Part shown: positions 13,440-53,871 of the stretch, in pieces
Numbering within the stretch: position 1 is the first letter of the stretch
How the letters are laid out: every line of letters begins with the position of its first letter
Origin: Lama guanicoe
Taxonomy: Eukaryota
DNA: 64,000 bases
Direction: 5' to 3'
Assembly (NCBI GenBank): GCA_013239625.1
Contig: MU055269.1
Span: forward strand, 3,473,225 to 3,537,224
Notes under the pieces: model-generated
What the model saw: the letters and a program-made list of their open reading frames with translations, nothing else
Database searches by the model: none
Told to the model about the DNA's origin: nothing
Made by a program: the position numbers and the translations under genes

Positions 13440-13930
13440 AGCGGGATGGGAATTTCCTTTCTCCGGCCTGCCAGTGGAAGCGCTTTTCCAAATTTCCACA
13501 GCGGGGGAAGCCTGCGATTTTACATAATGACTTCAGCATGCAGGGCCCTCTCGGCACCCTCGTCGTCTCCTGGCCCTCCCCCTCGGCTCCCTCATTAAAG
13601 CAGAGCGTGATTCTCTCAGGACACCGCGTGGACCCAGGCATCCGGGCTGGTCCGGAGGCCGGGTGCGCCCAGTCGGCCCCGCGTGCGCCCCTGCTCGCCC
13701 AGTGAGCCCCAGCCCGCCCCCCTTGCGCCCTGCGGGCCGGGCGAGCGGCGCCCCGCGCAGGGAGGGGCGGGAGCTCGGCGACTGGTCCCCCGGGCTCAGC
13801 GCCGGCTCGGGCGGGCGGGGGCGTGATGTCACGGCAGGGAGGGGGCGCGGGAGCGGCCGGGCCGGCGGGGAGGAGGGGGAGGTATTTTCCAGCTTTAAAA
13901 AGGCAGGAGGCAGAGCGCGGCCCTGCGTCA
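13440..13930 (+). promoter_or_regulatory. NFATC1: NFATC1 P1 (inducible, auto-regulated) promoter
   Basis: Distal block: kB site GGGAATTTCC (13448-13457), tandem NFAT sites TTTTCCA/ATTTCCA (13484-13498) and CRE/AP-1-like TGACTTCA (13528-13535). Proximal block: GC boxes, CRE-like TGATGTCA (13824-13831), NFAT site TTTTCCA (13885-13891) and TATA-like TTTAAAAA (13894-13901). This matches the known P1 architecture and lies in a CpG island of about 13200-14700. Confidence 0.85.
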
Positions 13931-18645: not shown

Positions 18646-18901
18646 NNNNNNNNNNNNNNNNNNNNNNNNNNNNNNNNNNNNNNNNNNNNNNNNNNNNNNN
18701 NNNNNNNNNNNNNNNNNNNNNNNNNNNNNNNNNNNNNNNNNNNNNNNNNNNNNNNNNNNNNNNNNNNNNNNNNNNNNNNNNNNNNNNNNNNNNNNNNNNN
18801 NNNNNNNNNNNNNNNNNNNNNNNNNNNNNNNNNNNNNNNNNNNNNNNNNNNNNNNNNNNNNNNNNNNNNNNNNNNNNNNNNNNNNNNNNNNNNNNNNNNN
18901 N
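18646..18901. other. Assembly gap (N run) in the P2 CpG island
   Basis: Run of N. Other gaps are at 21216-21348, 42562-42729 and 53240-53478. Confidence 0.99.
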
Positions 18902-20812: not shown

Positions 20813-21420
20813 TTTTTTCTTTTTTATTAAGACTTTTCAGAGCAGTTTTAGGTTCACAGCAGAACTGAGAGGAAGGGACAGGTTTTCCCAGGTGCCCTCT
20901 GCCCCGATGGGGGCACAGACTCCCTCCCTATTAGCACCCCCACCAGAGGTTGCGTTTGTACTGTTGTTGGACCTACACTGACACGTCATCACCACCCAGA
21001 GTCCTTAGGTTCACAGGGTTCACTCTGGGTGCTGAATGCTCTGTGGGTTTGGATGAATACATAGTGACTCGTATCCAGGATAATTGTCACCAGAGGAGTG
21101 TCACTGCCCTGAAAACCCTCTGTGCTCCACCTGGTCCTCCCTCCTGCGAAACCTTGGCACCACTGATCTGTTCACTGTGTCTGTATTTTTGTCTTTTCCA
21201 AAATGGCCTATAGTTNNNNNNNNNNNNNNNNNNNNNNNNNNNNNNNNNNNNNNNNNNNNNNNNNNNNNNNNNNNNNNNNNNNNNNNNNNNNNNNNNNNNN
21301 NNNNNNNNNNNNNNNNNNNNNNNNNNNNNNNNNNNNNNNNNNNNNNNNGAGTTTATTTACCCATTCAGTTCCCAAAGGACATCTTGGTTGCCTCCAAGTT
21401 TTGGTAATTGCGTGAATAAA
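20813..21420 (-). mobile_element. L1MC1/2-type LINE-1 3' end (contains an N-gap)
   Basis: A T-tail is followed by gacttttcagagcagttttaggttcacagcagaactgag...cacccccaccagag...gacctacactgacacgtcatcaccacccagagtcc...agggttcactctgggtg...cactgccctgaaaaccctctgtgctcc...caccactgatctg, the reverse complement of the L1MC1 3' UTR. Confidence 0.88.
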
Positions 21421-25900: not shown

Positions 25901-27808
25901 GAGGCAGGGTGTCCGCACCTGTCCCAGGAGGTCACCGCAGGGGGGCGTCTCTCCCAGGGCCGCAGCCCAGCCTACAGCCCCAGGCCCCCTCTCCTGGGGA
26001 CCCTTGACCGTGTCCTCTGGGAAGTCCTGTTCCAAGGTTATTCACTTCTCATTTGATTTTCACAAAGATTGCAATTTCGTTTTTAACCCTCGATTGTGGT
26101 GTTTTTGGTGAAAGTCAGTAAGCCTCTGAGGGTGTTGGTGTGACTGGGGGGCGCAGCGGACAGAGGGGGCTGTGCCCGGCGTTGGGGTCTGGCCTGTGGA
26201 AGGGGAGACTGTCCTGTCCCCTGGGGTGGGGGGGGGGGTGGGGCGGTGCAAGGGCGCAGATGGGGCTGGGGAGCGAGGCTTGGGGGCAGCAGTTTTGTGG
26301 GCAGGTGTGTCCTTGGACCCCCGGAGCCCCCCTGTCCCAGCTCCCTCCTCCTGCCTGGGGCCTCTGATTCCCTCAGCTGCAGTTTGTTTTCTTGGCTCAG
26401 CTCAGTCTCTCCCCAGGGCTGTTTAGAATCCGGCACCGAGTTTGAGCATCTGGAAGTCTGGAGCTTTCTCTCCAAAAGGCAGCGCGCCTGACACCCCGGG
26501 GTGAAGGCAGGGCCTGGCTCTCCCTCCAGGATGTGCCCAGGGGAGTGGCGAGCAGTGCTTTCCTGGGAAGGGGGTTTAGCGTGTCAAAGGCAGAACTTCT
26601 TGGTAGCAAGGACTATAAAAGACTGGATTGCCAGAGAAGGTAGTTGAACCCCTGCTTCTGGAAGGAAGCGGTGGTGGAAACGGGCTCCCCTCACTGGGGC
26701 TGCTGGACCCACTTCTGTTAGTGAATACGGTGGGCGGAGCCTGCATTTGAGGCCCCTGATTTTCTGGGGTTTTCCCAGCCAGCACAGCAGGGGGGCAGCC
26801 CTGCCCTCGACCACAGTATCTCCCAGCGGCAGACTTAACCCAGGAGCGGGCTGTACGGTTTCCAGGGGGCGCTTCCATTATTCAGAGGCCTGGGGAGACT
26901 CACCTCTTGGTGCACGAAGATGAGGGGCCGAGATGTTACAAAAAGTCAGTTCAAATCGGAGGCCCAGAGTGTGGCTTTCCTGTTCAAAACTACTAATTAC
27001 ACTAGTAGTGATTTTTGGAAGTGTTTGGAGGTTGTAATTAATGCGTAATGACTTTAAACGTGACTGCACGTCGATGTTGCCAGCTGGGTTTTTTTAAGAA
27101 GAACTCTTAGGCCGTGAGTTACCATCGGCGTTTCTGTGAGAGACCCCGGTTTCTGTGTTTTCATCCAAAGGTGCTTTCTTTGTAGCTGGTGACTGGGGCA
27201 CCTGCATGTGACTAGTCTGTTAAAATGCCTTTAGATGTGCGCGTCCCAGCGTCTAAAAGCCAGCCACCCAGCCAGCCCTCCGCCAGTCCACCCACCAAAC
27301 CCTCCTCCGGCCCCCACCCTGTCTGCTCACTGAACAAACGGGGCACAGACTCCGTGTTGAGGTCCCGCGAGCCACACTAGGCTCACCCAGCAAAGGTCTC
27401 TGCCGGCCCAGAGCTTGGTTTCTGCGGGCGAAAGACGTGGTGGACGAGGAGACAGGCGTTCAGGAGGGAAAATCCAGTGAGGGGGGATGTAAGTGTTGGG
27501 TGGGGACTGGGATTTTGAGAGGGTGGCTGGGGGGCAGGTTTTGAGTAAAGAGCAGAAGAAAGTAAGGGGCCGACCAGTGGTGTGGCCTTGGGCAGGGGGA
27601 CGCGGGGGCAGAGGGAAGCTCTGGTGTGGAGAGTGGGGAGGGCCCAGGGAGGGGCTCGAGCTGCCTCCCGTTGGGGCAGCAGGAGCTGAGCGACCCCACA
27701 GGGCCCCTGCCCACAGGTAGCGGGGTGGGGCAGGTCCCCGATCCTGGGTTCCTAAGCCTGTGGTTTGTGTCTGGGGACCAGCTGCTCATCCCTCCCTTTT
27801 CCTTCCAG

Positions 27809-28907
27809 AGCATTACAGCTATGTCTCCTCCAACATCGCGCCTGGCCTGCCCCTCACTGTGGCCCACCCCTCGCTGCCAGCCCCATGCCACGACCTGCAG
27901 ACCTCGGCCCCGGGCGTCTCAGCCGCTGCGTCCGCGAGTCACCCCGCGGGGTACGGTGGAGCTGTGGACGGCGGGCCCTCAGGCTACTTTCTCGCTTCGG
28001 GCAACGTCAGGCCCAACGGGGCGCCGGCTCTGGAGAGCCCCCGCATTGAGATCACCTCGTACCTGGGGCTGCACCACAGCGGCAGCCAGTTTTTCCATGA
28101 CGTGGAGGTGGAGGACGTCCTGCCCAGCTCCAAGCGGCCCCCGTCCACGGCCACCCTGAACCTGCCCAGCCTGGAGGCCTACCGGGACCCCTCGTGCCTG
28201 AGCCCGGCCAGCAGCCTGTCCTCCCGCAGCTGCAACTCCGAGGCCTCGTCCTACGAGTCCAGCTTCTCCTACCCGTACGCGTCCCCTCAGACGTCCCCCT
28301 GGCAGTCCCCCTGCGTGTCCCCCAAGACCACAGACCCCGAGGAGGGCTTTCCCCGCGGCCTGGGGGCCTGCAGCCTGCTCGGGTCCCCACGGCACTCGCC
28401 CTCCACCTCGCCCCGCACCAGCATCACTGAGGAGAGCTGGCTGGGCACCCGCACGTCCAGGCCCCCGTCCCCCTGCAACAAGAGGAAGCACGGCCTCAAC
28501 GGCCGGCAGCTGTCCTGCTCCCCCCACCACTCGCCCACGCCGTCGCCGCACAGCTCGCCGCGGGTCAGCGTCACTGACGACACGTGGCTGGGCAACACCA
28601 CGCAGTACACGAGCTCAGCCATCGTGGCCGCCATCAACGCCCTGAGCACCGACGGCAGCCTGGACCTGGGCGACGGCGTCCCAGTCAAGGCCCGCAAGAC
28701 CGCCCTGGACCACTCTCCTTCGGTGGCGCTCAAGGTGGAGCCGGCCGGCGAGGACCTGGGCACCACGCCACCCACGTCCGACTTCCCGCCTGAGGAGTTC
28801 TCGTCCTTCCAGCACATCCGCAAGGGCGCCTTCTGCGACCAGTACCTGTCGGTGCCGCAGCACCCATACCCGTGGGCCCGGCCACGCTCGCCCACCTCCT
28901 ACGCCAG
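27809..28907 (+). CDS. NFATC1: NFATC1 large shared exon encoding the regulatory (NFAT homology) domain
   Basis: Acceptor ttttccttccag| at 27808; 1099 nt. Encodes calcineurin docking PRIEIT (28039-28056), serine-rich region SPASSLSSRSCNSEASSYES, three SP repeats, NLS KRK (28480-28488), LKVE SUMO motif and LxVP motif YLSVP (28843-28857). Donor AG|gtgagc. Confidence 0.98.
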
Positions 28908-31900
28908 GTGAGCCGGGCCGCGCCGCAGAGCCGGCTGTCAGGGCCTGGAGGCCGGCAGGGCCGGTTCCTCCTTGGGGGGTGCTCTCTGCTTCCGCCCGGG
29001 GTTTGCTGTCCGCCTTGGCGCCCGTGGCTTCCTCCTGCCGTGTCTGGTGTCTGAGTCTGACCTCCTTTCTGGAGGCACCCAGGCGTGTCGGGGCGGGCCC
29101 CCCTGAAGACCTCTCCTTCACCGATTCTCTGCTTTCTGAAGGCCGTCTCCATGTGAGGCCCTGTTCGGAGGTGCTGGGATCAGGGCTTCGGGGACAGGAG
29201 TCTGCCCATAACGGGTTTTCAGACACGTGCGAGGTTTCTGTTTTCGGTGGAGCCTGGCGCGTGTCTGTGGTTCTGCCCCCCCCCCACCCCTCTCCGCCTA
29301 ATTGCCGTCCTCGTCCTCGTCGGCACAGATGGGGCCTCGGCTCAGCGACTCCCCAGAGCCGCCAGCCCTGCCGCGTTTGGAACAACACAGCCTCCCCCCC
29401 CACCCCCCGGAGACGCCCGCCGCCTGGCTGTGAGCTCGGCACCTCCGAACCCTCATCTGGGGCTGTTGGGTTTTCTTCTAACGGCGTCGTGGCTGCTGGT
29501 GCTCCGCTGGGTCCACTTACTCAGCCTGGGGTTTTTATTTTTAACTAAACAGCTTTCCCAACAGGTGGCCGCTAATGCCCCCTGCAGAGCGCTTTCTGCT
29601 GCAGGGCTTCTGTCGGGCATAGCCTGCACGCCGCCCTCCGAGGCCTCTGTCGCGGGCCGGGCCGCCCCCGGGAGGAGGCGTGTGCCGGGCACCTGTGCTT
29701 CTGCCTGTGGTTTTGGGTATTTGAGGCTTAGCGCTCTGTTTTCCTGCTCCTCTTTGTTAGGGGGCATTCTGGGGGCGAGGCGGGGAGCAGGCCCTGCTGG
29801 TGTCCGGCGGTCGTGCCGGGAGCGAGGAGAGCGCGTCAGTAAGCCACTGACCGCAGAGCTCGCTCCCTCCCGCCCAGACCCTCTGTCCCCACGGCTAACC
29901 TGCACACGGTGGACTCAGAGCCACAGGTGGCCGATTTAATTCTCGGCCCCAAATGAGCTTAGCTAAGCCGTTCTAGAGATTTGTGGCAAAGAAAGAGCAT
30001 GAGAACTGACGGTTAATCAGCTGCTGAACACTCGCTTTCTGCCGCGTGTGTAGGCGTCAAGGGGCAGGGAGAAAGCAGGACTTACCGCTGACTCCTCCCT
30101 GGCTGGCATCAGGGTGCGTCCTCATTTCTGTTGCTTAAGAAGCTGGTGTATTCAAAGTTACTCTCAAAACAAACCTATCTATGAACCTGGATTTCATTCA
30201 TCAATGTGGGAATTAAAAAACCCACTTAGAGGCATTTAAAACGTGTGGGAGCTGTTTCTGCAAGCTGTACTTCTTCACAATTTTTATTTAAATAAAAAAG
30301 AATATTTGAAAGGTGACCTCAAGCACAGACTCACACGCAGTTCGTAACCTTCTGCATTTTCGTGACCACGAAGGTCCCCGTGGCTGATGAGGAGACTTGG
30401 GTGAACCTACGTCAGAGAGAGTGAGGTAGTGACTGCAGCCGCGGCGACGACTCTGGCCTGCGGGTTTGGGACGAGGGGGCGGAAGTTCAGGTGGACCCTG
30501 GCGTCTGCAGGGGCTGCCACGACAAACATGCGGACGCTCAGTCCCCACGCGTCTCGCGGAGCCACACTGCCTTTCTGTGTGGTTACAGGGGTGCCAGCCC
30601 GTGGCCACGCCTTAATTTGGTGGCTCCTGTGAAGACCCTGAATCCAAGCACGGTCGCCTTCTGAGGTCCCGGCTGGGGGCTCCGACCGGGGACCTTTGGC
30701 GGGGCCAGCTCAGCTTGTGACACCTGGTGCTGGGGTGGGTGGGACCCTGGTGCCTCCTTCTTCCAGGCCCCTGGCTGCCGGGAGCCTGCGGGAACGCGGG
30801 TGTTTCTGGCGAGGTGTCCTCTGCGCACCAGGCATCTTTACCCCGGGGTCTGGGCGATGGCCTTGGGGCCGAGACTCTGCCTCTTCCTGCCTTGGCTGCG
30901 AGCCCTGAGTGAGGGGTTCTGCCCGCAGCACTCCCGTGAGTTCAGGCAAACAGACCCCGTGGACGCACCACCCTTCCCCCTGGGGGTTGAAGTCAGCTTT
31001 TCCCACTATTTTGGTTCCACGCCAGAACACGTCTCCTGGTCCCCAGCGGCGGTACGTTTCCATGTGACCCCGTCCAGGTGCTCGGGGGGAGAGCGGGGTC
31101 GGCTGCTTGACCCACTGGGGCCGGTGACCGACTTCTTCCCACGGCGGCTGCTGCGCGTGCCCGAGACGGGGGGCCAGCCCAGGGGACGCCAGCGGGCGCT
31201 CGGGCCACACAGCTGAGGTGCGAGTGTGGGACGGCCTCTGGCATCTGGGGTGGAGAATTCATCGGGGCGAGTCCAGTCCCCTTGCCTGGGTGCGGCCCCG
31301 CCGCGCACGCTGCTAGCTCTGTCCTGAGGGGGAGGAACTTTCTCGTGAGACGTGTGCGGTGCTGGCCCCTCCCCAGGGGTCTCGGTGTTGTGGGACCGTT
31401 TCCCCTTGGGGGCCTTTCTGCCTGGATAGCGTGTGTGGCACGCCCCTCGGTGCAGAGCGGTCTGACAGACCCCCAGGCGTCACAGAACGATGCTGAGTTC
31501 TTGCCACAGAAGCTGTGCTTGTGAAAGCAGCAGCGGTGTTTGCACAGGAGTGAATCGTTTCAGAGTTTAGACTTATTTTGGGGCTTAAGAACGGTGTTCC
31601 TGCCCTTGGAGCTCAGGAGACGCTAGAGCCCCCAGATGAGGGTTTTGGGTTCTGCGTCGGAGTCCGGCCACAGCCTCTTCAGAACGGAGAGGGTCCTCTT
31701 CCCACTGTGCTCCAGGCTGCGGGTGAGAATGACTAATTCTGCCGGCGACAGTCACAGGCAGCGCCCACGGTCCCCTCGTCCGCACGGTGGGGGTGGCCGG
31801 AGGTGCTGAGAGTGGAGGGGCCCTGCCAGCAAGGCCGGGGACAGGAGAACCCTCGCCGGCGGGGTTGTTTCCGGGTGGTGGTTCTCAGATGGTGGCTTTT

Positions 31901-32590
31901 GGAGGACTTCACGCCGACCCAGAGGAGCTAAAGCTTAAGCGTCTGTGGAGCTGAACGCACTAGAGCGCCTGTCGGGGCGCTCGCGGTCCGTCCCGTGAAC
32001 TGGCTCGCGGGCAGTGTCAGCTTTCGAGGTTTCAGCATCGTTGGCGATCTGGGTCCAGCGTAATCTCTGAATCGTCTCTAAAGAGGCGAAGTCCATGAGG
32101 GTGTGGACTGAGAGGGAGCTGGGTTTGGAAGGCAGAGCGTCTCCAGAAGAGGCTTGTGACCCAACAGCGCGCGGCCGGACTAACTGCCCGCCGTGGCGCG
32201 CGCCCTTTTGAGGGAAGACGCAGGAAGCAGTAGCCTCCTGGGGGCGAGGGCGGCGCAGGGACGGGGGCGCCAGGTCCGCTTGGTTCAGGGACCCGAGGCC
32301 TGCACGTCCAAACCGCTTCTTCCAGGTCTTGGCTGCGGCTGATGATCTGAGTGACGTTCTCGACTCTTAGGCCGCACGTAAGCGTTGGCTCCAGAAGCCT
32401 GACGGAGCCGTCGCTGACCCCAGCTGCACTGCGTCCGCCCGTTTCAGGGTTTATCCCCGTTTGGAGTCAGATTGGGTAAAGCTGGAGGCTGGTGACCACC
32501 CCTAGCGCGTCACTCCTCCCCTGCGGCCCCGACCCTGGGCCGCCTGCGCTGGGGGCTGCAGGCAGGCCAGCCCCCGGCCCCCGCCTGCCA

Positions 32591-32995
32591 AGAGTCCAGC
32601 TCTACCCACTGTGAACAGGGCCTGAGCGGGTGGCCCGGAGGCTGAGCACAGGCCCTGCTAGTGCTCGGGTGGAGCAGAGACCTGCTGCGATTCCACAGGC
32701 TCCCCGCTAGCTGGCTTCTCTTTTAAAGCTCAGTCTCAGAGAGCTTCCTTTTGTGATGTCAAACAGAAAAGCAACCCCCCCCACCCCGGCACCGGGCGTG
32801 TCACTCGTGGGTTGCTTTTCTGTTTGACATCACAAAAGGAAGCTCTCTGAGACTGAGCTTTAAAAGAGAAGCCAGCTAGCGGGGAGCCTGTGGAATCGCA
32901 GCAGGTCTCTGCTCCACCCGAGCACTAGCAGGGCCTGTGCTCAGCCTCCGGGCCACCCGCTCAGGCCCTGTTCACAGTGGGTAGAGCTGGACTCT
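32591..32995. repeat. Perfect inverted repeat: 187-bp arms (32591-32777 and 32809-32995) with a 31-bp spacer
   Basis: Base-by-base comparison shows the right arm is the exact reverse complement of the left arm (agagtccagctctacc...aaacagaaaagcaaccc / gggttgcttttctgttt...ggtagagctggactct). Confidence 0.97.
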
Positions 32996-34544
32996 CGCCC
33001 GTGACCAGCTGCCCCGGAGCTGCCCCTCGTGGGCCTTTGCTCCCAGGAGCCCCGAACAGACTTCCCTCAAATTGGGGGGCGGGCCGTTGGGGGGCGCCAG
33101 GGGAGCCTGAAACCTTCCTACGACATACGTGTCCTGGGCCAGGTGCTGACATGCCGCCAGGGGAGGTGGGAACCCAGCAGACAGAGGTCTGACCTTGACC
33201 GCAGCCTCTCCCAGAGGCTCTTGCAGGTGGATTCCGTCCCCAGGGCAGCTGGGGCTCTGCGTTTCTGCTGGTGGGCCCCTCGCCGCAGGAGCACGTGGTC
33301 TTAGAGACTCAGACCCCCTGCAGCTCACGGAGCAGCCTCCCCCTGGTTCCCAGAGTCGCAGTTGACGCTGTGAAAGGTGCTTCGAGTCCCAGCTTCAGCT
33401 AAGATGTGGGTTTGAAGTGGAGGGAGCGGCGGGCAGGAGGCTCCTGCCCCGAGGTGCGGAGGACGTGGGCCCCTGTTTCTCTTTTTGATGTTATTCTGTG
33501 GATGTCTGTAATTATTGGCCACGAAGAAGAGAAAGAGAAACTCAGATCCTTTTGTGTTCCTGGAGCCGATAAAATAATTTGCATCTTGGTGGCTTTGCAC
33601 GCAGATTTTCACGTCGAGCCACTGAGATCTGAAATGCTGGCTGGTTGTGTGGGATAATCCAAATGCCAGAGAGTGGCAGCCCCGAGACGGGTCACGCCCG
33701 GCCTGGTCCTGCGCAGGCCCCTCTGTCCACCCCAGGGCATGTGGGGGCGGGGCTGCACGCAGGAGGCTCAGGCACCAGCCCGGGCCTTCCTGGGTCTCCG
33801 ACCTGGAGAGTTCCCAGACTGCTGAGCCTCGGCCGGGAGGAAGCGTCCAGCGGCGACACGCGCCAGTGACCACAGACAAAACAGAGCTGATTTCTGCTCA
33901 GACGTCTTCCTCTGGGGCAGGTGTGTTCCGAGCTCGTCTGGGGCCCCGCACACCTGCCACACACCTGGGCCGGCTGAGGCCAGGTAACGGTCCCGCCGGG
34001 GCTCACACACGTCATTGTGGTGGGGGGCCGGTGATCGTCCACGCTTAACACTAGACCTTCTGTGCAGGTTAGTGGGCCTTATTTGCCAATTGTTTCTTGG
34101 TTCTTGAGCAAAAACCTGTTCACGTCATGATGGGTTTGTTTCTTCAATGAATGGTTCTGAAACACCTTCTGGAAGCTGGGGTTTGACATGCAGCAGTAGC
34201 TGAGTTTCAGTGAAGAAAGCGACTTCAGTGTTGTTTTTCCCTGAGATTTCCCGTCTGAGTCCGTCTGTGCTCTGGGCACCCCGCCGCCCCGCTTGCCCCT
34301 CACGTGAGGGAGGTTTTTTGGAGAGGAGCCGTCTGGAGCTTGGTGCCCACACCCCTGGAGCCCAGAGCGCTGCATTAATTATGCTCCGACCTCCCGGTGC
34401 CTCGGAGGGTCCTCGGGGCCTCTGGAAATGCCTGCTTTTCTCTTGAGAGTCACCTCCCGCAGGTGAGTGTGGCCACCCGCAGGGCAGCCACACTGAGCCC
34501 GAAGCTCATTAGGGCCGTCTGGACGCAGGGACCGGGCACCGGGC

Positions 34545-34680
34545 CAGCGAGCCCACGGCTGTGGGAGACGGAGTGCGGGCATAAGTCCCATCTTACAGAC
34601 GGGGATGCTGAGGCATGTGGAAGTTCCTGGACGCACAATCAAAGAGCGGGGAGCCGTGAGGTCTAGTGACGCGTGCGTGG
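34545..34680 (-). mobile_element. MIR SINE fragment
   Basis: cccatcttacagacggggatgctgaggca resembles the MIR core CCCATTTTACAGATGAGGAAACTGAGGCA. Confidence 0.6.
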
Positions 34681-35534
34681 TCACTGCAGGGCTCCAAGGC
34701 CAGGAGGCCCCAGTGACAGCCGCCGGGGTGCGTCACAGGGGCCGGACACATGCCTGGAGGTGGCCCTGGGGTCTCACTGCTTTATCTTGAGCCAGGGGTT
34801 ACGAGGAGGGGGTGAGGCAGCGGAGACGCGTGTGTGGTGAGGGGGTACGGTGGTCACTCGCAGGCGGTGGCCAGAGACCACAGCGACGAGGGGGCAGCAC
34901 CCAGCCGGCTGCGCCTGTCGGGCACAGGATCTCCTCGGGCCCGAGGATGGGCTCTGCTGCGAACAGCGGGCGTCAGGATCTGAGCTGTTGCAGCGAGACC
35001 CTCCCTAGCTCCTGCGTTGCCCTGGTCCTCGGGAGCCACGTGCTGGCTCAGACATCTTCCTGTGGCTGACTTGAGAGCAACTGTATGTATTATGTCCTGA
35101 GCCACTGAAGTCTGTTTTAAACTTCGAATTTGGAAACCGAATGGCTACTATTTAAAGACTCTCTGGGCTTTTCTGTGGGCCCCATGTTAAAACTAAGCAG
35201 AGGAGGGGTGAGCTCTGGGGGTCGCCCGCCGACTCTCCTGGTGTTTCTGTGGTGGAAAGTACATCGGAATGTCGCCTTCGGGGCTAACTTGTGCCCCATC
35301 CTGCGTTACTCGGCGATTCTGAGTCTCTTCGTCTGTGAGCCATCCATGGCAGCCGGAGTGTTCTCGCCCTGAGCCTTCATCTCTGCCACGACTGACTGGC
35401 AGCAGGCTTCAGTGGCACCCGAGACAGCATTTGGGCCTGAAGTCACTGTCACAAACATGCTGGAATCTGCCCCCTGTAGTGTGAAGGTCAGAGGAGCAGC
35501 AGAGTTTTCCCATGGGGTTCCTCACCCAGGGGCC

Positions 35535-35835
35535 GATCCTTCATCCATCTGTTCTTTCTCCCTTCCTGCCTTGCCTCCTTCTTCCGTCCATCCGTCCATC
35601 CTCCCACTCATTCACCCACCCACCCATCATCCACCCATCATGCATCCATCATCCATCGTTTGTCCTTCCACCCGCCCATGAACCCATCGTCCATCCATCA
35701 TCCACCCACCCATCCATCCATCCATCCGTTTGTCCTTCCACCCATCCACCCACCCACTCATCGTCCATCCATCATCCATCTGTTTGTCCTTCCGCCCGCC
35801 CATTAACCCATCATCCATCCATCCCTCCCTCCCTC
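35535..35835. repeat. Degenerate (CCAT)n simple repeat with a higher-order unit
   Basis: Repeated ccatccatc/ccacccacc, with gtttgtccttcc recurring three times at about 60-70 nt spacing. Confidence 0.85.
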
Positions 35836-38800
35836 CCTCTGTCCCCTGGGTGTGTGTGACAGGCAGGGGCCCTTCCCAGCGCTCTTTGTCCTACTCCCAG
35901 AGATAAGCACGAGGGGACAGCAGTGTCCTCCCTCGTCCAGACAGTCCTGGGCCCTGGGGCGGAGGAACCGGCTGCGAGTGCAGGTCCCGACCTTGGGTCG
36001 GGGAGAGAAGCTCCCCCAAAGCAGCTGCCTGTCCGTCTCAGCTGGACCCCCGGACAGGCGCTCGTGCCGTCCCATGAGCTGGGCCCCGCTGAATCACGGG
36101 GACGCCTGGGGCCCTCAGACACGCCTTCGCCGTGTGTGTGGTCAGGGAGGTCTTAGGAGCGGGCCTGTCCTCCCGGGCGGCCCGCACCGCTGTGTGAGGG
36201 GAGCGCCGGGGTTCTGCCCTCGTGGAGGAGACCCCCAGAAAGCCATCCACTCCGGGGAGAGGGGCCGGGCCCCGTCTGCCCGGGTGCTGCCCGGCTCCCC
36301 CATCCCAGGTGCGGGGCGGCGGGAGCCGTCGGGAAGCCAGTCTGGGACGGCGCGGCCTGAGCAGCTTACGTGGAAGTGGAGTGGTTTTTTATGGAGGGGG
36401 TGCAGAGCAAGGATGACGGGGATTTTCCAGGGAGCTGGAAGGAAGTCTCTGCCTCCTTGGAGCTCTCCACGCTCTGCTGGTGGAGCCACTGAAAGCAATG
36501 AATTCTTTGGAAATTCCTGAGTCGCCATTATAAGAAAAAGAATCCCTCAATGGTGGCCTTGCCGGGCTTATTCTGAAAGTCTCAGGTTTGTGATCGAGTC
36601 TGAGTGGAATTCCTGACCAGAAGCAGGCCTGGCAGGACTCCCACAAGTGGGGAGCCTGAGCAGGTGGGCTCCCAGACCGCCCTCCCCTGCTGAGCACGCC
36701 CCAGCGCTTGACCCCATCTGGGCCCCAACCCCCAGGGACCAGTCAGGCCCCGACGGGGCCCCTGGAGGGTCCTGAGCCCCATGCTGTCAGCGGCGGACGG
36801 GCGGGTGCTCCGTCCGCATGGCACCCCGAGGGCGGGCGGTGGTCCCTCCTCTCGCCTCGCTGGCCTCCTTCTCTTGTGCTGCCCAGACGTCCCTCGTCCC
36901 GCTGTTTACCCAACCCAATGTCTCCGTAAAGCACCTCCCAGCCCCTGGGTGCGTTGGCGCCTCGCGCACGCAGCTCCTGCCCCTGGGCCCTGTCAGCACC
37001 ATCCTGAGTGACAGCGCAGTCGGGTGTGACAGCCTGAGACTCCCAGCCTCTCCAGGCACGAAGTCCTGCCTGCGGCCTCTCCCCTCAGCCCCACCTGTGC
37101 CGTCCAGACTCACCAGGAGTGAAAGGCTGGCTCTGAAGGAGTTTTCTAAAGGCCCATCCTGGACAGCAGCCAGCCCCTCCCTGAGAGGTGTTCCCTGGAG
37201 GGTGGGAGGGGCCCCCAGCACATGACACCTGGAGGGGTACCCGAGGTGGCACAACTGACAGCAGAGTGGGTGGCAGGAACCCACAGGCCCTTCAAACCCC
37301 ATGGGATTATCAGCCGAGAAACCCGGCTTTGCCCGGCGCACCCACCTGGCCTCTCCCCACGGCCCCTGGCCGCCCTGCAGAAGGGCCGGCCCCCTTGAGT
37401 GGGAGGAACCGTCTCCCCCAGGGCTTGGCCGGCGGTGTCAGGGGCCATGGCTGGAGCGTGGGCGGCCGCTGGGCGAGCTGGGTGGTCCTGGGCGCAGCCC
37501 CTGCTCCACGGGCATCTGGGGGCCCAGAGACCCTGCATAACAGCCCAGAACTGAGCTGACGGCCTTTTTTAAAATCAGAGGGAAAAAACAAAACAAAGCA
37601 AGTAACAGGAGGCCCTGGCTCCGACTCTGGGAGAACGTGTTCCTTTCAAACGTGGGTAACGTCCTTCCCCTGAAGCTCTGGTGTCTCTCCTTGGGCGGAT
37701 TCGAGGCCTGCCAAGTGCAGTCTGTAGCTTCAGTTGCGGTAGAGGCGTGAGAGTCCCAGAAGGGCACCGACCAGCTTTTTCCTAAGTGGTGAGTCCACAT
37801 GGGCCCAGCTCTCAGGAGGCGCAGAAGTGAAAGGGTTCTACCCAGACCGTCTGAACAGAGGTGCTGCCCCCCCCCAGCGCCTGTCCACGTGATGAGGGCT
37901 TCAGCCGGGGGTGGGGGCTGGTGGAGGCCCCGTGCGCGGCCGCCTGGGCGGTGGGGCTGGGGTGCATGTTGGTTCTCAGCGTGGGGTGAACACGGCCTTT
38001 CTGAGGAAGGAGGCTGGCGGAGGGGCCTCAGGCTGGGTGAAGAAGCCACTTTGCCGAAGTCACTGCCTCCGGTGCAGAACAGTCGCTGAGCTCCCAGGGC
38101 AAGGGCGGAAGGTGGGAAAATGGGTTATTTTGGGGGTTTACAGCTAATATCCTTCACCGTTTTTCAATGTAGGTAAGCAAAAAGAAAACTGGCTCCCCGG
38201 CAGCTCCCTGACCGGAGCGTCACGGGGACGGCCGTGGCACGCGTCCCTGGGGCTGCTCGTGAACATGGCTTTTGGGCTTTCACTCGTGTTACAGAAAACC
38301 AAACTTGTACAGAGTCCGAGACGAGTCACGAGTCCCCATGCTCACCCTTAACCTGGCCGATGAACTCGGGGTCAGCTGGCCTCACCCCGACCCACAGCCG
38401 GTTACTTTGCAGCAGAATCTCAGACCTCCCTCAATCTTATCCATCGACACTGTGTGCGTCTTCCAAAGATAGGCACTCGTTTAAGAAACTAGTTGTGACG
38501 CCAGTAGAGGCCACGCTAGGAAGCTAACAAGTGCCTTGAAATGACCCCTTAACCGAACAAGTGAGTGTTCGGATCCCCGATGCTGTGTTATTTTCTTGGC
38601 AGTTGTCGAGTTCCGGCCCCGTTCCTCTCGGTCATTCCGGTGCACGGTGTCTGCCTCCTGCGCACACAGCTGTAGGGGGCTCGGCGGTTCCCCGTGTCCC
38701 ATGGGGCACGCCTCTGTCCCAGGAGTTCCCTGCTTTTCCTCAGGCTGGTGGAGACCCCGGGCCTTGCTGGGATCTGGCTCCATGTTTAGGCAAGTGATGG

Positions 38801-41767: not shown

Positions 41768-42360
41768 CCTCCCTCCCGCTCCCCTCACCAGCGCCAAAAT
41801 AACAGACCAGCTCCCAGACCCACCTCGGGCCCCACAGCCGCCCCCTCGTTTGCTGGCCTGGGGCTGCAGCTCCTTCCTGCCCTTGGTGGGTGCTCGACAC
41901 CTGTCACGCACGAATCATGGGGCTGAGGCTGGGGCGAGGTCCTGATACGGAGCCCGTCGCGTCCCCAACAGTCAAGTCCTGCCACCCAGCTGGGCCCTAG
42001 CTGGTGGGAAGCGATGATTAGAACCAGGCCTTCCTGTTCTTAGGCCGAGTGGGTACCACTGTGATTTTGAAAGACCTTTAATCTTACTGGGGAGGTTAAA
42101 TAATTTATCTGCCTATCGTGAAGGAAAGAAAGTACTTCCAGGTCTAGTGTGGAGGAGTCTCCACCTTATTCAGGAAAACACTTCCGGGTCTATTGTGGAA
42201 GTGTTTCCATCTTATTCAGGAGGCTCGTCATGAAGACCCGAAAGGCTCCGGGCACATGAGCCGTCAAAGACGTTTAGAGGGCTGTGTCAGGGTGCAGTCC
42301 TGCCTGATGAGGGTTTAGACGCCAGCGGTGCAAGGTGAACTGCCCGTGGCCCCGGGGTCA

Positions 42361-42800
42361 CAGGGTGGGGCACGGGGGACGGGACGTGGGGGATGGGGTG
42401 CAGGGGACGGGACGTGGGGGACAGGGCCCAGGGGATGGGGTGCAGGGGATGGGACATGGGGGACAGGGCACAGGGGACAGGGAGTGGGGGACAGGGCACA
42501 GAGGATGGGGTGCAGGGGACGGGACATTGGGGATGGGGTGGCAGGGGACAGGGCACAGGGGNNNNNNNNNNNNNNNNNNNNNNNNNNNNNNNNNNNNNNN
42601 NNNNNNNNNNNNNNNNNNNNNNNNNNNNNNNNNNNNNNNNNNNNNNNNNNNNNNNNNNNNNNNNNNNNNNNNNNNNNNNNNNNNNNNNNNNNNNNNNNNN
42701 NNNNNNNNNNNNNNNNNNNNNNNNNNNNNGGGGATGGGGTTGCAGGGGACAGGGCACAGGGGATGGGGTGCGGGGGATGGGGCGCAGGGGACGGGTGCGG
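42361..42800 (+). repeat. G-rich minisatellite (GGGGATGGGGTGCAGGGGAC.. / GGGGACAGGGCACA units), partly in an N-gap
   Basis: Repeated ggggatggggtgcagggga, gggacgtggggga and ggggacagggcaca modules on both sides of the 42562-42729 gap. Confidence 0.9.
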
Positions 42801-42828
42801 TGTCTAATGCTCTTCCATCCCCTTTCAG

Positions 42829-42988
42829 CCCAACTCTCCCGGCCCTCGACTGGCAGCTGCCGTCTCACTCAGGACCCTATGAGCTGAGGATTGAAGTGCA
42901 GCCCAAGTCTCACCACAGAGCCCATTATGAGACGGAGGGGAGCCGGGGGGCTGTGAAGGCGTCGGCCGGAGGACACCCCAGTGTGCAG
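42829..42988 (+). CDS. NFATC1: NFATC1 exon, start of the Rel-homology domain
   Basis: Acceptor cccctttcag|; 160 nt; (S)[53 protein letters not shown], including the DNA-recognition loop RAHYETEG; donor CAG|gtacca. Confidence 0.98.
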
Positions 42989-52087: not shown

Positions 52088-53871
52088 GTGAGTAGCCGCC
52101 CCGCCCTGCCTCCCTTGTGACTCCAGGCCAGTCCGACCGGTCGTGCCCTTTCCAGGAACAGCTTTCTTGCTATGTGCGCAACCCTGTGAACTGTGCTTGT
52201 CCCACCAAACATGGTCGTGGACGGTATCTGTTCCTTCCTGCACTGGTGCAGGGCCTCCCCCACCCCAGCACCTGCTGGAGGGAATCGAGGAAAGGAAGTT
52301 TGTTCCCAGACAGTGAGCCCTGTGTGTTGATCGCATTTGAGTTAATCTCCCCCCGTCTCAGGAGACTTGAGAAAGTGGCGTTTGCGTTGTGGTCTGTCGG
52401 GTTGGGCGGTCCTGAATTTGCCGGCTGGCGCAGAGCTCGGCCCTCCATCCCCTGTGTGGACCTGCCCAGGTGGCTCTGGGCCTCTGGCCTTGGGCTTACC
52501 GCTGGGCTCGTCTGGGTGGTCGGACGGCCAAGAAGTGAGGTCTGCCCCCTTCCGTGTTAGCAACGTGGGTGGCTGGTGCCACCCTGGGCAGAGACCCGTG
52601 GCCCCGCTGCAGCCCCTGCTTCCCGACCTGGGAACCTGACTGTCCCCTGGCCACTGCCCCTGGAAATGCCCTTCCGTCTTCTCTGAAGGTCCCCTCCAGG
52701 GTGTGGCTGTCTCAGGAGCTCTGTCCCTATGGCTCACCCGTCTCAGCGGGAGGGTCCTGCTTTGGTCTCTGTGCCTCTGACCTGAGGGCCCGTTGGACCT
52801 CGGTGACCGGGCCCTTCCTGCCCCACAGCCGCTCCTCTGCGATGGTGGCCTTTGCCTCACTGCCCCGCCTCCCCCGCTCCTGCTGGACCCTCACTTGCAG
52901 ACTCCAGATGCCCGTCCCAGGCCATGGGGCCTGCAGCAGTGGCCTCATCTCTGCTGTGTGATCTCCTCCTTCCTCCAGCTCATGGGTCCCTTGGTCATGG
53001 GGTGACCATGTGAGGGCCCCCGGCACGTAGCCAGCCCACAGAAACACCGTCCTCACCACCTGCTTCCGTGCAGACTTCTGGTTGCTGCCTGCATCTGTGT
53101 CCTCTGCCTGTCCTGCCTCTCGCAACAGCCCGGGTTCTCGGAGCCTGTGTGTCTGCTGCCCCCCCACCCCCGGCCCTGAGACACATCCATCCTTGGACGG
53201 GCCCCCCACATCCCAACCTGCTCTCTGGGATCAGCCTCANNNNNNNNNNNNNNNNNNNNNNNNNNNNNNNNNNNNNNNNNNNNNNNNNNNNNNNNNNNNN
53301 NNNNNNNNNNNNNNNNNNNNNNNNNNNNNNNNNNNNNNNNNNNNNNNNNNNNNNNNNNNNNNNNNNNNNNNNNNNNNNNNNNNNNNNNNNNNNNNNNNNN
53401 NNNNNNNNNNNNNNNNNNNNNNNNNNNNNNNNNNNNNNNNNNNNNNNNNNNNNNNNNNNNNNNNNNNNNNNNNNNNNNCCCCCCCCCCGGCCAACACCTG
53501 GCCCCACCCCCCTCCTCCGCCAGCACCCGGGGGAGGGCACTCCCCGTTGCTTCCAAAGACAGCAGCCCGTTCCCCCAGTGCAGGGGTCCAGGTGGGGAGT
53601 TGGCTGTGAGTCTCCGCGGCGGGCTCTGTCCTCACGGGCTCCCGCGGCTTCCCCGGGCCCTCCACGGGGCCCACCCTCGAGCGGAGGCTCACACACAGGC
53701 TCACACGTGTGTGCACACGCACCTCGGGAGACCTGCGAGTCAGACGTGTGGCTTCCCTTGGGCGTCGCCCCTCCCGGGGCACGTCGCCACACTTCCGTTC
53801 CGGGTGCAAGTGACTGTCGGGGTGGTCGGCGGTGCGGGCCGGCTCACACGCACGTTCCTGTCCCCACACAG

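What the first reader, a model, noticed from the sequence alone, without database searches (positions are those of the whole stretch)
32591..32995. Perfect 187-bp palindrome (31-bp loop) in NFATC1 intron: candidate long intronic dsRNA hairpin or cruciform
Seen: two arms of unique, non-transposon-looking sequence are exact reverse complements over 187 bp, separated by cccccaccccggcaccgggcgtgtcactcgt. I found no target-site duplication at the outer edges. Every transposon fossil nearby is strongly diverged, so zero mismatches implies a very recent inverted duplication, ongoing arm-to-arm conversion, or a technical chimera. Established: long perfect intramolecular duplexes in pre-mRNA are substrates for ADAR editing, can yield Dicer-dependent endo-siRNAs and can alter splicing. 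Short-spacer palindromes also extrude cruciforms and are fragile. Inference: each arm carries an ETS-like AGGAAG and TGATGTCA (the same octamer as the proximal P1 CRE-like site), so the event would also double a possible enhancer module in the intron separating the regulatory-domain exon from the DNA-binding exons. The draft, gapped assembly makes an artefact a real alternative.
Basis: partly seen in the sequence, partly recalled or inferred. Interest (0 to 1): 0.75.

Follow-up and report, generated by a model that had tools for sequence, protein, structure and literature searches.

The report
Fold-back assembly artefact in NFATC1 intron
The perfect 187-bp palindrome is really written in this draft camelid assembly, but three independent animals have only one arm and 19 GC-rich letters where the second arm sits, so it is most likely a fold-back error at a hard-to-sequence spot and not a biological hairpin.

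Summary
Arms 32591-32777 and 32809-32995 are 100% complementary over 187 nt with a 31-nt spacer, and this is the only inverted repeat of 40 nt or more in the 64-kb window. The gene context also holds: the palindrome lies about 3.7 kb into the NFATC1 intron between the regulatory-domain exon and the first Rel-homology exon.

The second arm is private to this assembly. I laid contigs from three independent DNA runs (three organism labels, three studies). In each, one 9-12 kb contig runs straight through, skips 32590-32769 and carries 19 G/C-rich letters there. Those letters occur nowhere in the window. So the right arm, the spacer and 32770-32777 (one half of a natural inverted repeat of up to 8 nt) are genuine. 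The left arm replaces real sequence.

The left junction lies in the top 1% of the window for GC (85%), the kind of DNA that flanks three of this assembly's four N runs. It is blunt, has an orphan base and no target-site duplication. Small differences cluster beside it.

Best reading is a snap-back or fold-back chimera built into the assembly (about 0.75). A real, private template-switch inverted duplication in the assembled animal is not excluded (about 0.2), because that animal's own reads were not seen. The dsRNA, cruciform and enhancer-doubling ideas have no support as camelid biology.

The parts
32590..32769 (.). 180 letters present only in this assembly: an orphan 'a' at 32590 plus the exact reverse complement of 32817-32995. 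This is most of the 'left arm' and is probably a false fill.
   Evidence: Contigs of runs X1, X2 and X5 skip 32590-32769 and hold 19 other letters there (tables 5, 5c, 8). Those 19 letters are absent from the whole window even with 2 mismatches allowed.
32770..32777 (.). Inner end of the left arm (agcaaccc). It is genuine sequence and forms one half of a natural short inverted repeat, the likely turning point of the fold-back.
   Evidence: The run contigs resume at 32770. It is complementary to 32809-32816. The boundary is good to a few letters only, because table 8 lists one more differing letter per piece than table 3 does.
32778..32808 (.). 31-nt spacer. It is genuine unique sequence, C-run rich, and not palindromic.
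   Evidence: It is covered without change by all three run contigs. 32770-32808 is 74% GC with C8 and C4 runs.
32809..32995 (.). Right arm: the genuine single-copy intronic sequence, 58% GC, with 5 CpG. It carries one AGGAAG and one TGACATCA.
   Evidence: It is covered without change by all three run contigs. Composition is and motif positions.
32530..32589 (.). Left flank up to the junction. It is 85% GC, in the top 1% of 60-nt windows, with small differences from other animals clustered at 32551-32552 (2 letters extra in a G run) and 32558 (G against T).
   Evidence: Composition is. The differences are shared by X1, X2 and X5 (tables 3 and 4).
27809..28907 (+). NFATC1 regulatory-domain exon (approximate ends). 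It carries SPRIEIT, serine-rich and SP-repeat motifs and a KRK motif.
   Evidence: Translation is and AG/GT boundaries. There is no Pfam or PDB hit. The name rests on motifs known for NFAT proteins (my own knowledge) and on the neighbouring exon.
42829..42988 (+). First Rel-homology (DNA-binding) exon of NFATC1.
   Evidence: Pfam RHD_DNA_bind at 3e-06, above the cut-off. The best solved structures are human NFATC1 1nfa and 1a66 at 3e-27.

Best explanation
The left arm is a technical fold-back built into this draft assembly, not part of the animals' genome.

The real sequence reads: left flank to about 32589, then about 19 almost pure G/C letters, then 32770 onward (spacer and the single 'right arm').

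Inferred mechanism:
- The true stretch is a run of C/G tracts of about 120 nt, which sequencing covers poorly.
- A DNA strand broken at about 32770 snapped back on the natural short inverted repeat (32770-32777 pairs with 32809-16).
- A polymerase filled it in as far as the fragment's other end at 32995. This gives one 405-nt perfectly palindromic molecule, the size of a library fragment.
- With few or no true reads across the G/C tract, the assembler or gap-closer used this chimera.
- It then abutted the chimera to the left contig at 32589/32590. That explains the blunt junction, the orphan base and the poor-quality letters beside it.

Shown: absence of the arm in three independent samples, replacement of 19 letters, composition, and junction anatomy. 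Inferred: the in-vitro origin and the assembly step.
For: -: in X1 (organism A, study P1), X2 (B, P2) and X5 (D, P4), a single contig of 12.6, 11.1 and 9.2 kb spans 31600-34000. Each skips 32590-32769 and has the same 19 letters between the two sides.
- those letters are not in the window.
- 32770-32777 is retained and pairs with 32809-32816, so a natural short inverted repeat sits exactly at the turning point. This is the signature described for library-preparation chimeras at natural inverted repeats (PMC10908179). Fold-back reads are a documented artefact class (PMC12870357).
- the left flank is 85% GC (0.95% of 60-nt windows reach this). Three of the four N runs in the window are flanked by similar G/C-run DNA, so this assembly fails at such sequence.
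- the 180-nt fill lies within the size range of the window's N runs (133-256).
-, tables 3 and 4: a 2-letter G-run length difference and a substitution lie within 40 nt of the junction.
- the outer junction has no microhomology and no duplication.
- none of the 14 DNA holders exceeds 0.91 of the words. None holds the window's exact form, which would give about 1.0.
- High error rates at gap-closing sites are reported in PMC9575681 (abstract).
Against: - The reads of the assembled animal itself were not seen.
- The window differs from all three runs at two CpG sites (32222 and 32239, where the window has the deaminated letter). Its haplotype was therefore not among those laid.
- A replication template switch in vivo would leave the same sequence signature: an inverted copy of nearby DNA, a short inverted repeat at the return point, a small deletion and nearby point changes.
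- Contigs drop rare variants, so a low-frequency palindromic allele in the three samples is not excluded.
- Palindrome-only words are just 2.2% of the stretch, so word shares cannot test the arm itself.
- I do not know how the assembly was made.
- 582 other windows of this genome have no note of a similar long perfect palindrome, so this is not an obvious systematic artefact.
Confidence: 0.75

Rival explanations
1. The palindrome is a real but private or rare inverted duplication in the assembled animal, made in one step by a replication template switch (four-point TSM, or FoSTeS/MMBIR-like). The nascent strand left its template at about 32589 and copied the opposite strand from 32995 back to about 32817. 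It then returned by the inverted repeat of up to 8 nt to 32770-32778, losing 19 letters. If so, NFATC1 pre-mRNA of that animal would carry a 187-bp perfect hairpin.
For: The one-arm form is shared by three organism labels, so it is the older state and the palindrome is derived. The inserted piece is an exact reverse complement of DNA 40-225 nt away and replaces a short segment, with microhomology at the return point. That is the pattern of template-switch mutations, which create perfect hairpins in one event and are enriched in introns (PMC5453318; PMC10710096). The G/C-tract site could stall a replication fork. The window's haplotype differs from the runs by two natural-looking CpG transitions, so it was not sampled.
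Against: The assembly is gapped, and three of its four gaps in this window sit at G/C-run sequence like this one. The outer junction is blunt with an orphan base. Letters that look low in quality, including a G-run length difference, sit beside it. The total length of 405 nt equals one library fragment. The palindrome is absent from 3 of 3 samples. No independent molecule supports it. The template-switch screen I read sets only a lower length limit (14 bp), so 180 nt has no documented precedent among the papers checked here.
Confidence: 0.2
2. The palindrome is a fixed, functional feature of this camelid's NFATC1 intron: a long dsRNA hairpin for ADAR or Dicer, a cruciform, or a doubled enhancer module.
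For: The window's sequence folds perfectly. Sub-threshold matches to miRNA precursor models, best 51.9 bits against a cut-off of 98, reflect only the hairpin shape. TGATGTCA occurs 5 times in the window against 1.0 expected.
Against: The left arm is missing in three independent samples of three organism labels. No Rfam family reaches its gathering score. The RNA run that was laid gave no contig here. Two of the five TGATGTCA matches are the two palindrome copies themselves.
Confidence: 0.03
3. The arms are the terminal inverted repeats of a MITE or other foldback transposon.
For: There are long perfect inverted arms with a short spacer.
Against: There is no target-site duplication. There is no other copy of the arm in 64 kb. 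The 'empty' form in other animals keeps one arm and the spacer and has 19 different letters, which is not an excision or empty-site pattern.
Confidence: 0.02

Closest known systems
Snap-back or fold-back chimeric molecules from library preparation and sequencing (PDSM model, Chen et al. 2024, PMC10908179; foldback reads, Heinz, Meyerson & Li 2026, PMC12870357)
   Same: One part of the molecule is the exact inverted complement of the adjacent part. The turn sits at a short inverted repeat that exists naturally in the genome. The whole molecule is of fragment size (405 nt).
   Different: Those papers describe single reads that cause false variant calls. Here the chimera would have been fixed into a published consensus assembly, which needs the true reads to be missing at that spot. 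I have not seen the reads.
Mis-filled gaps in draft assemblies (gap-closing errors; PMC9575681 abstract)
   Same: False sequence sits between two correct contigs at a place of extreme GC. Its length (180 nt) resembles the N runs left elsewhere in the window. Low-quality letters lie next to the join.
   Different: The assembly method is unknown to me, and no N remains at the site.
Template-switch mutations (Loytynoja & Goldman 2017, PMC5453318; Monttinen et al. 2023, PMC10710096)
   Same: They share the four-point geometry: leave, copy the opposite strand nearby, return. They replace a short ancestral segment and create a perfect hairpin in an intron in one step.
   Different: There is no evidence that the event happened in a cell. 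I found no 180-nt event in the passages I read.
Long palindromes of mammalian genomes (PATRRs, transgene palindromes). From my own knowledge, not tested.
   Same: Long near-perfect arms with a short or absent spacer, and potential for hairpin or cruciform formation.
   Different: PATRRs are AT-rich and are polymorphic but recurrent loci. These arms are 58% GC, and the second arm is not seen in other animals.

Membership tests
Fold-back (snap-back) chimera fixed in an assembly | The inverted copy is an exact complement of directly adjacent sequence | tested here: met
   187/187 complementary.
Fold-back (snap-back) chimera fixed in an assembly | A short natural inverted repeat lies at the turning point | tested here: met
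   32770-32777 and 32809-32816 are both kept in the independent contigs. The length is up to 8 nt, and the boundary is good to a few letters.
Fold-back (snap-back) chimera fixed in an assembly | The extra arm is absent from independent samples, and real sequence is displaced | tested here: met
   3 of 3 run contigs hold 19 other letters instead. Those letters are absent from the window.
Fold-back (snap-back) chimera fixed in an assembly | The assembled individual's own reads do not support the junctions at allelic depth | not testable with these tools
   The single read-laying run was used on other samples.
Template-switch mutation (four-point model) | The derived segment is the reverse complement of nearby sequence and replaces an ancestral segment | tested here: met
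   The ancestral state is taken from three other organism labels.
Template-switch mutation (four-point model) | The event exists in genomic DNA of a carrier | not testable with these tools
   There are no reads of the assembled animal, and no carrier among the runs laid.
MITE / foldback transposon | Target-site duplication at the outer ends | tested here: not met
   The outer neighbours are TGCCAA and CGCCCG, with no repeat.
MITE / foldback transposon | The empty site lacks the whole element, and other copies exist | tested here: not met
   Other animals keep one arm and the spacer. No further copy occurs in 64 kb. The genome-wide copy number was not testable.
miRNA or other Rfam hairpin RNA | The score reaches the family's gathering threshold | tested here: not met
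   Best are mir-605 at 51.9 bits against 98 and mir-515 at 40.1 against 68. These are generic hairpin matches.
NFATC1 gene (context) | A Rel-homology exon closest to NFATC1, and an NFAT regulatory exon upstream on the same strand | tested here: met
   Pfam RHD_DNA_bind at 3e-06. PDB 1nfa and 1a66 human NFATC1 at 3e-27, ahead of NFATC2. The regulatory exon has SPRIEIT and SP repeats. Its naming by motifs rests on my own knowledge.

The most novel reading that the evidence does not exclude
The palindrome is real in the assembled animal: a single template-switch event at a G/C-tract (possible G-quadruplex) site copied 180 nt of the opposite strand. That would create, in one step, a 187-bp perfect hairpin inside the NFATC1 pre-mRNA. 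It would be a far larger de novo hairpin than anything I found in the template-switch passages read here, and a natural test case for ADAR or Dicer action and for palindrome stability in a mammal.
Probability: 0.2. Interest if true: 0.4.

Novelty: not a real feature. Interest (0 to 1): 0.1.

Why it matters
The main value is as a warning. A striking, statistically overwhelming structure in a draft assembly disappears when independent samples are consulted. Any annotation, enhancer call or hairpin or miRNA prediction at this NFATC1 intron in this assembly would be misled. About 19 real letters are also missing from the assembly here. The anatomy makes a reusable signature for screening draft genomes for fold-back errors: a natural short inverted repeat at the turn, fragment-sized total length, a blunt outer join, and an extreme-GC site. 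If the 20% alternative were true, this would be an unusually long one-step template-switch hairpin in an expressed intron. That would be of moderate interest for work on hairpin birth and palindrome stability.

Tried and rejected
- Rfam at a permissive threshold over 30000-36000 gave only sub-threshold miRNA-shaped matches, which any perfect hairpin would produce.
- The MITE/TIR idea was rejected: no duplication, no other copies, and the wrong 'empty site'.
- A metagenome scan with a genuine 28-mer from the spacer and right arm, meant to fetch further independent copies, gave 0 hits. I skipped the second scan because the collection evidently holds no copy of this locus.
- I tried look-up of encoding contigs on a nearby ORF to fetch more camelid contigs.
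- The protein-atlas search was tried for the regulatory exon. It was closed for new sequences.
- Pfam and PDB searches on the regulatory exon gave no hits. The exon was named from its motifs and its neighbour.
- Word shares of the 14 DNA holders cannot test the arm. The expected share for the one-arm form is 0.94 +/- 0.016 and the observed range is 0.87-0.91, but palindrome-only words are just 2.2% of the stretch.
- Earlier notes of this scan gave nothing at this place and no other long perfect palindrome of this kind in the genome.
- The RNA run X16 laid no contig, so nothing can be said on transcription.
- The X5 'loose end' at 31609 is only a one-letter difference near the start of the laid stretch.
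- Exons were searched one by one, and the spliced (joined) model was not built or searched. N runs were left untouched.

Full report
**Observation**

Arms 32591-32777 and 32809-32995 are 187 nt long and 100% complementary, with 31 nt between them (exactness re-checked by script). No other inverted repeat of 40 nt or more within 3 kb exists in the 64-kb window.

As single-stranded DNA the stretch folds at -288.9 kcal/mol against -88.3 +/- 4.3 for shuffles. Pairing stops sharply: 'a' at 32590 faces 'c' at 32996. No target-site duplication flanks the arms. The four N runs of the window lie about 10 kb or more away. I did not touch or fill them.

**Gene context**

- A 396-codon open frame at 27721-28908 (+) carries SPRIEIT, a serine-rich stretch, three SP repeats and a KRK motif. 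From my own knowledge these are hallmarks of an NFAT regulatory domain. Pfam and the PDB have nothing for it.
- Downstream on the same strand an exon at about 42829-42988 matches Pfam RHD_DNA_bind (3e-06, above the cut-off).
- Among solved structures this exon is closest to human NFATC1 (1nfa and 1a66, about 3e-27), ahead of NFATC2.
- AG/GT boundaries put the regulatory exon at about 27809-28907.
- The exons were searched one at a time. The joined, spliced model was not built or searched.

**Independent samples**

The look-up of sequencing runs listed 14 DNA runs, from four coded organism labels and six studies, that hold 0.87-0.91 of the sampled words of 31600-34000. I laid three of them from three labels and three studies (X1, X2, X5), plus one RNA run (X16).

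In each DNA run a single contig (12.6, 11.1 and 9.2 kb) covers the whole stretch. Each skips 32590-32769 and has the same 19 letters, CCGCCGGCCCCCAGCCCCC, between the two sides. These letters occur nowhere in the window, even with two mismatches allowed. The one-arm form therefore cannot come from collapsing the palindrome, because the reads of those animals contain sequence that this assembly lacks.

The genuine parts are the left flank to about 32589, the eight letters 32770-32777, the 31-nt spacer and the right arm. The 180 letters 32590-32769 (an orphan 'a' plus the reverse complement of 32817-32995) are private to this assembly and displace 19 real letters. The boundaries are good to a few letters only. 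Table 8 counts one more differing letter in a piece than table 3 lists, presumably next to a joint.

**Anatomy of the event**

- *The turn.* 32770-32777 (agcaaccc) pairs with 32809-32816 (gggttgct). Both are genuine, so a natural short inverted repeat sits exactly where the copy turns back.
- *Composition.* The last 60 nt of the left flank are 85% GC, a value reached by only 0.95% of 60-nt windows here. The 19 missing letters are 18/19 G/C. 32770-32808 is 74% GC with C8 and C4 runs. The true sequence is thus a run of C tracts of about 120 nt (G tracts on the other strand).
- *Gaps elsewhere.* Three of the four N runs in the window are flanked by the same kind of DNA (68-76% GC with G or C runs). 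One of them sits inside a 14-nt G-rich minisatellite. This assembly breaks at such sequence.
- *Size.* The false piece is 180 nt. The N runs are 133-256 nt.
- *Nearby differences.* Within 40 nt left of the junction the window differs from all three runs by two extra letters in a G run (32551) and by G against T at 32558.
- *Outer junction.* It has no microhomology.
- *Total length.* The whole palindrome is 405 nt, which is the size of one sequencing-library fragment.

**Most likely mechanism (inferred)**

1. A strand whose 3' end lay at about 32770 folded back on the natural inverted repeat.
2. A polymerase extended it to the other end of the fragment at 32995, giving one perfectly palindromic 405-nt molecule.
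3. Chimeric reads of this kind, turning at natural inverted repeats, are described for sonicated and enzymatically cut libraries (PMC10908179). Fold-back reads are a known artefact class in long-read data (PMC12870357).
4. True reads across the G/C tract were scarce, so the assembler or gap-closer followed the chimera.
5. Once inside the inverted copy, every ordinary read of the right arm supports the extension, which explains the perfect identity.
6. The fill was then abutted to the left contig. Gap-closing sites are known for high error rates (PMC9575681, abstract).

**The rival that remains**

A replication template switch in vivo would write the same sequence. It would leave the template at about 32589, copy the opposite strand from 32995 back to about 32817, and return through the short inverted repeat, losing 19 letters. 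Such events create perfect hairpins in one step and are found in introns (PMC5453318; PMC10710096).

I cannot exclude it, for these reasons:
- I did not see the assembled animal's own reads.
- The window differs from all three runs at 32222 and 32239. At both sites the runs have CpG and the window has the deaminated letter. These look like natural changes and show that the window's haplotype was not among the runs laid.
- Word shares do not help. The one-arm form predicts 0.94 +/- 0.016, and words that exist only in the two-arm form are 2.2% of the stretch. The shares show only that none of the 14 holders has the window's exact form.
- Contigs also drop rare variants.

I weigh this against the site's composition, the low-quality letters at the join, the blunt join with an orphan base, the fragment-sized total and the absence in 3 of 3 samples. 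That gives about 0.75 for the artefact and 0.2 for a real private variant.

**Other readings**

- *Fixed functional hairpin, cruciform or doubled enhancer.* This is contradicted. Rfam gives only sub-threshold miRNA-shaped matches. Two of the five TGATGTCA matches in the window are the two palindrome copies themselves.
- *MITE.* This is excluded by the lack of a duplication, the lack of other copies and the wrong empty-site pattern.

**Earlier notes of this scan**

Nothing was recorded at this place. Other follow-up notes call the genome an 'alpaca/llama-type' camelid draft and report private stop codons and possible GC-rich assembly errors elsewhere. These are unchecked leads. They fit a draft of modest quality but are not evidence here. 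No other long perfect palindrome of this kind is on record in 582 windows.

**Limits**

- A metagenome scan found no further copy of the locus.
- No vertebrate genome collection was available for orthologue alignment.
- The RNA run laid no contig.

**Verdict**

The structure is most likely not real biology. Novelty: not a real feature. Interest is low.

Noticed in passing
window 42326-42807: A 14-nt G-rich minisatellite (13 or more copies) is interrupted by the N run 42562-42729. It ends about 20 nt before the acceptor of the first Rel-homology exon of NFATC1 (about 42829). It is a possible G-quadruplex array right at a splice acceptor.
   Followed up: partly
window 18646-18901, 42562-42729, 53240-53478 (and 21216-21348): Three of the four N runs are flanked by 68-76% GC DNA with G or C runs. 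The fourth lies in AT-richer DNA. In this window the gaps mostly mark G/C-tract sequence.
   Followed up: partly
window 32222 and 32239: The window has A and T where contigs of three other samples have G and C. Both sites are CpG in the others, so the window carries two deaminated CpGs 17 nt apart. This looks like natural haplotype or lineage divergence, not error.
   Followed up: partly
window 592, 2385, 13824, 32754, 32825: TGATGTCA occurs 5 times against 1.0 expected by shuffling. Two of these are the palindrome copies, one of which is probably spurious. The site at 13824 lies in a GC-rich region with long open frames on both strands (13.4-14.7 kb), probably a CpG island or promoter.
   Followed up: no
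window 31600-34000: Three RNA runs labelled 'reproductive system metagenome' hold 9-12% of the sampled words of this intronic stretch, but the one laid (X16) gave no contig. Which part they hold, and whether it is RNA or carried-over DNA, is unknown.
   Followed up: partly
window ~31608: The contig of run X5 differs by one letter here. The 'loose end' reported at 31609 is the window's own sequence 31578-31607 shifted by that letter, not a rearrangement.
   Followed up: yes
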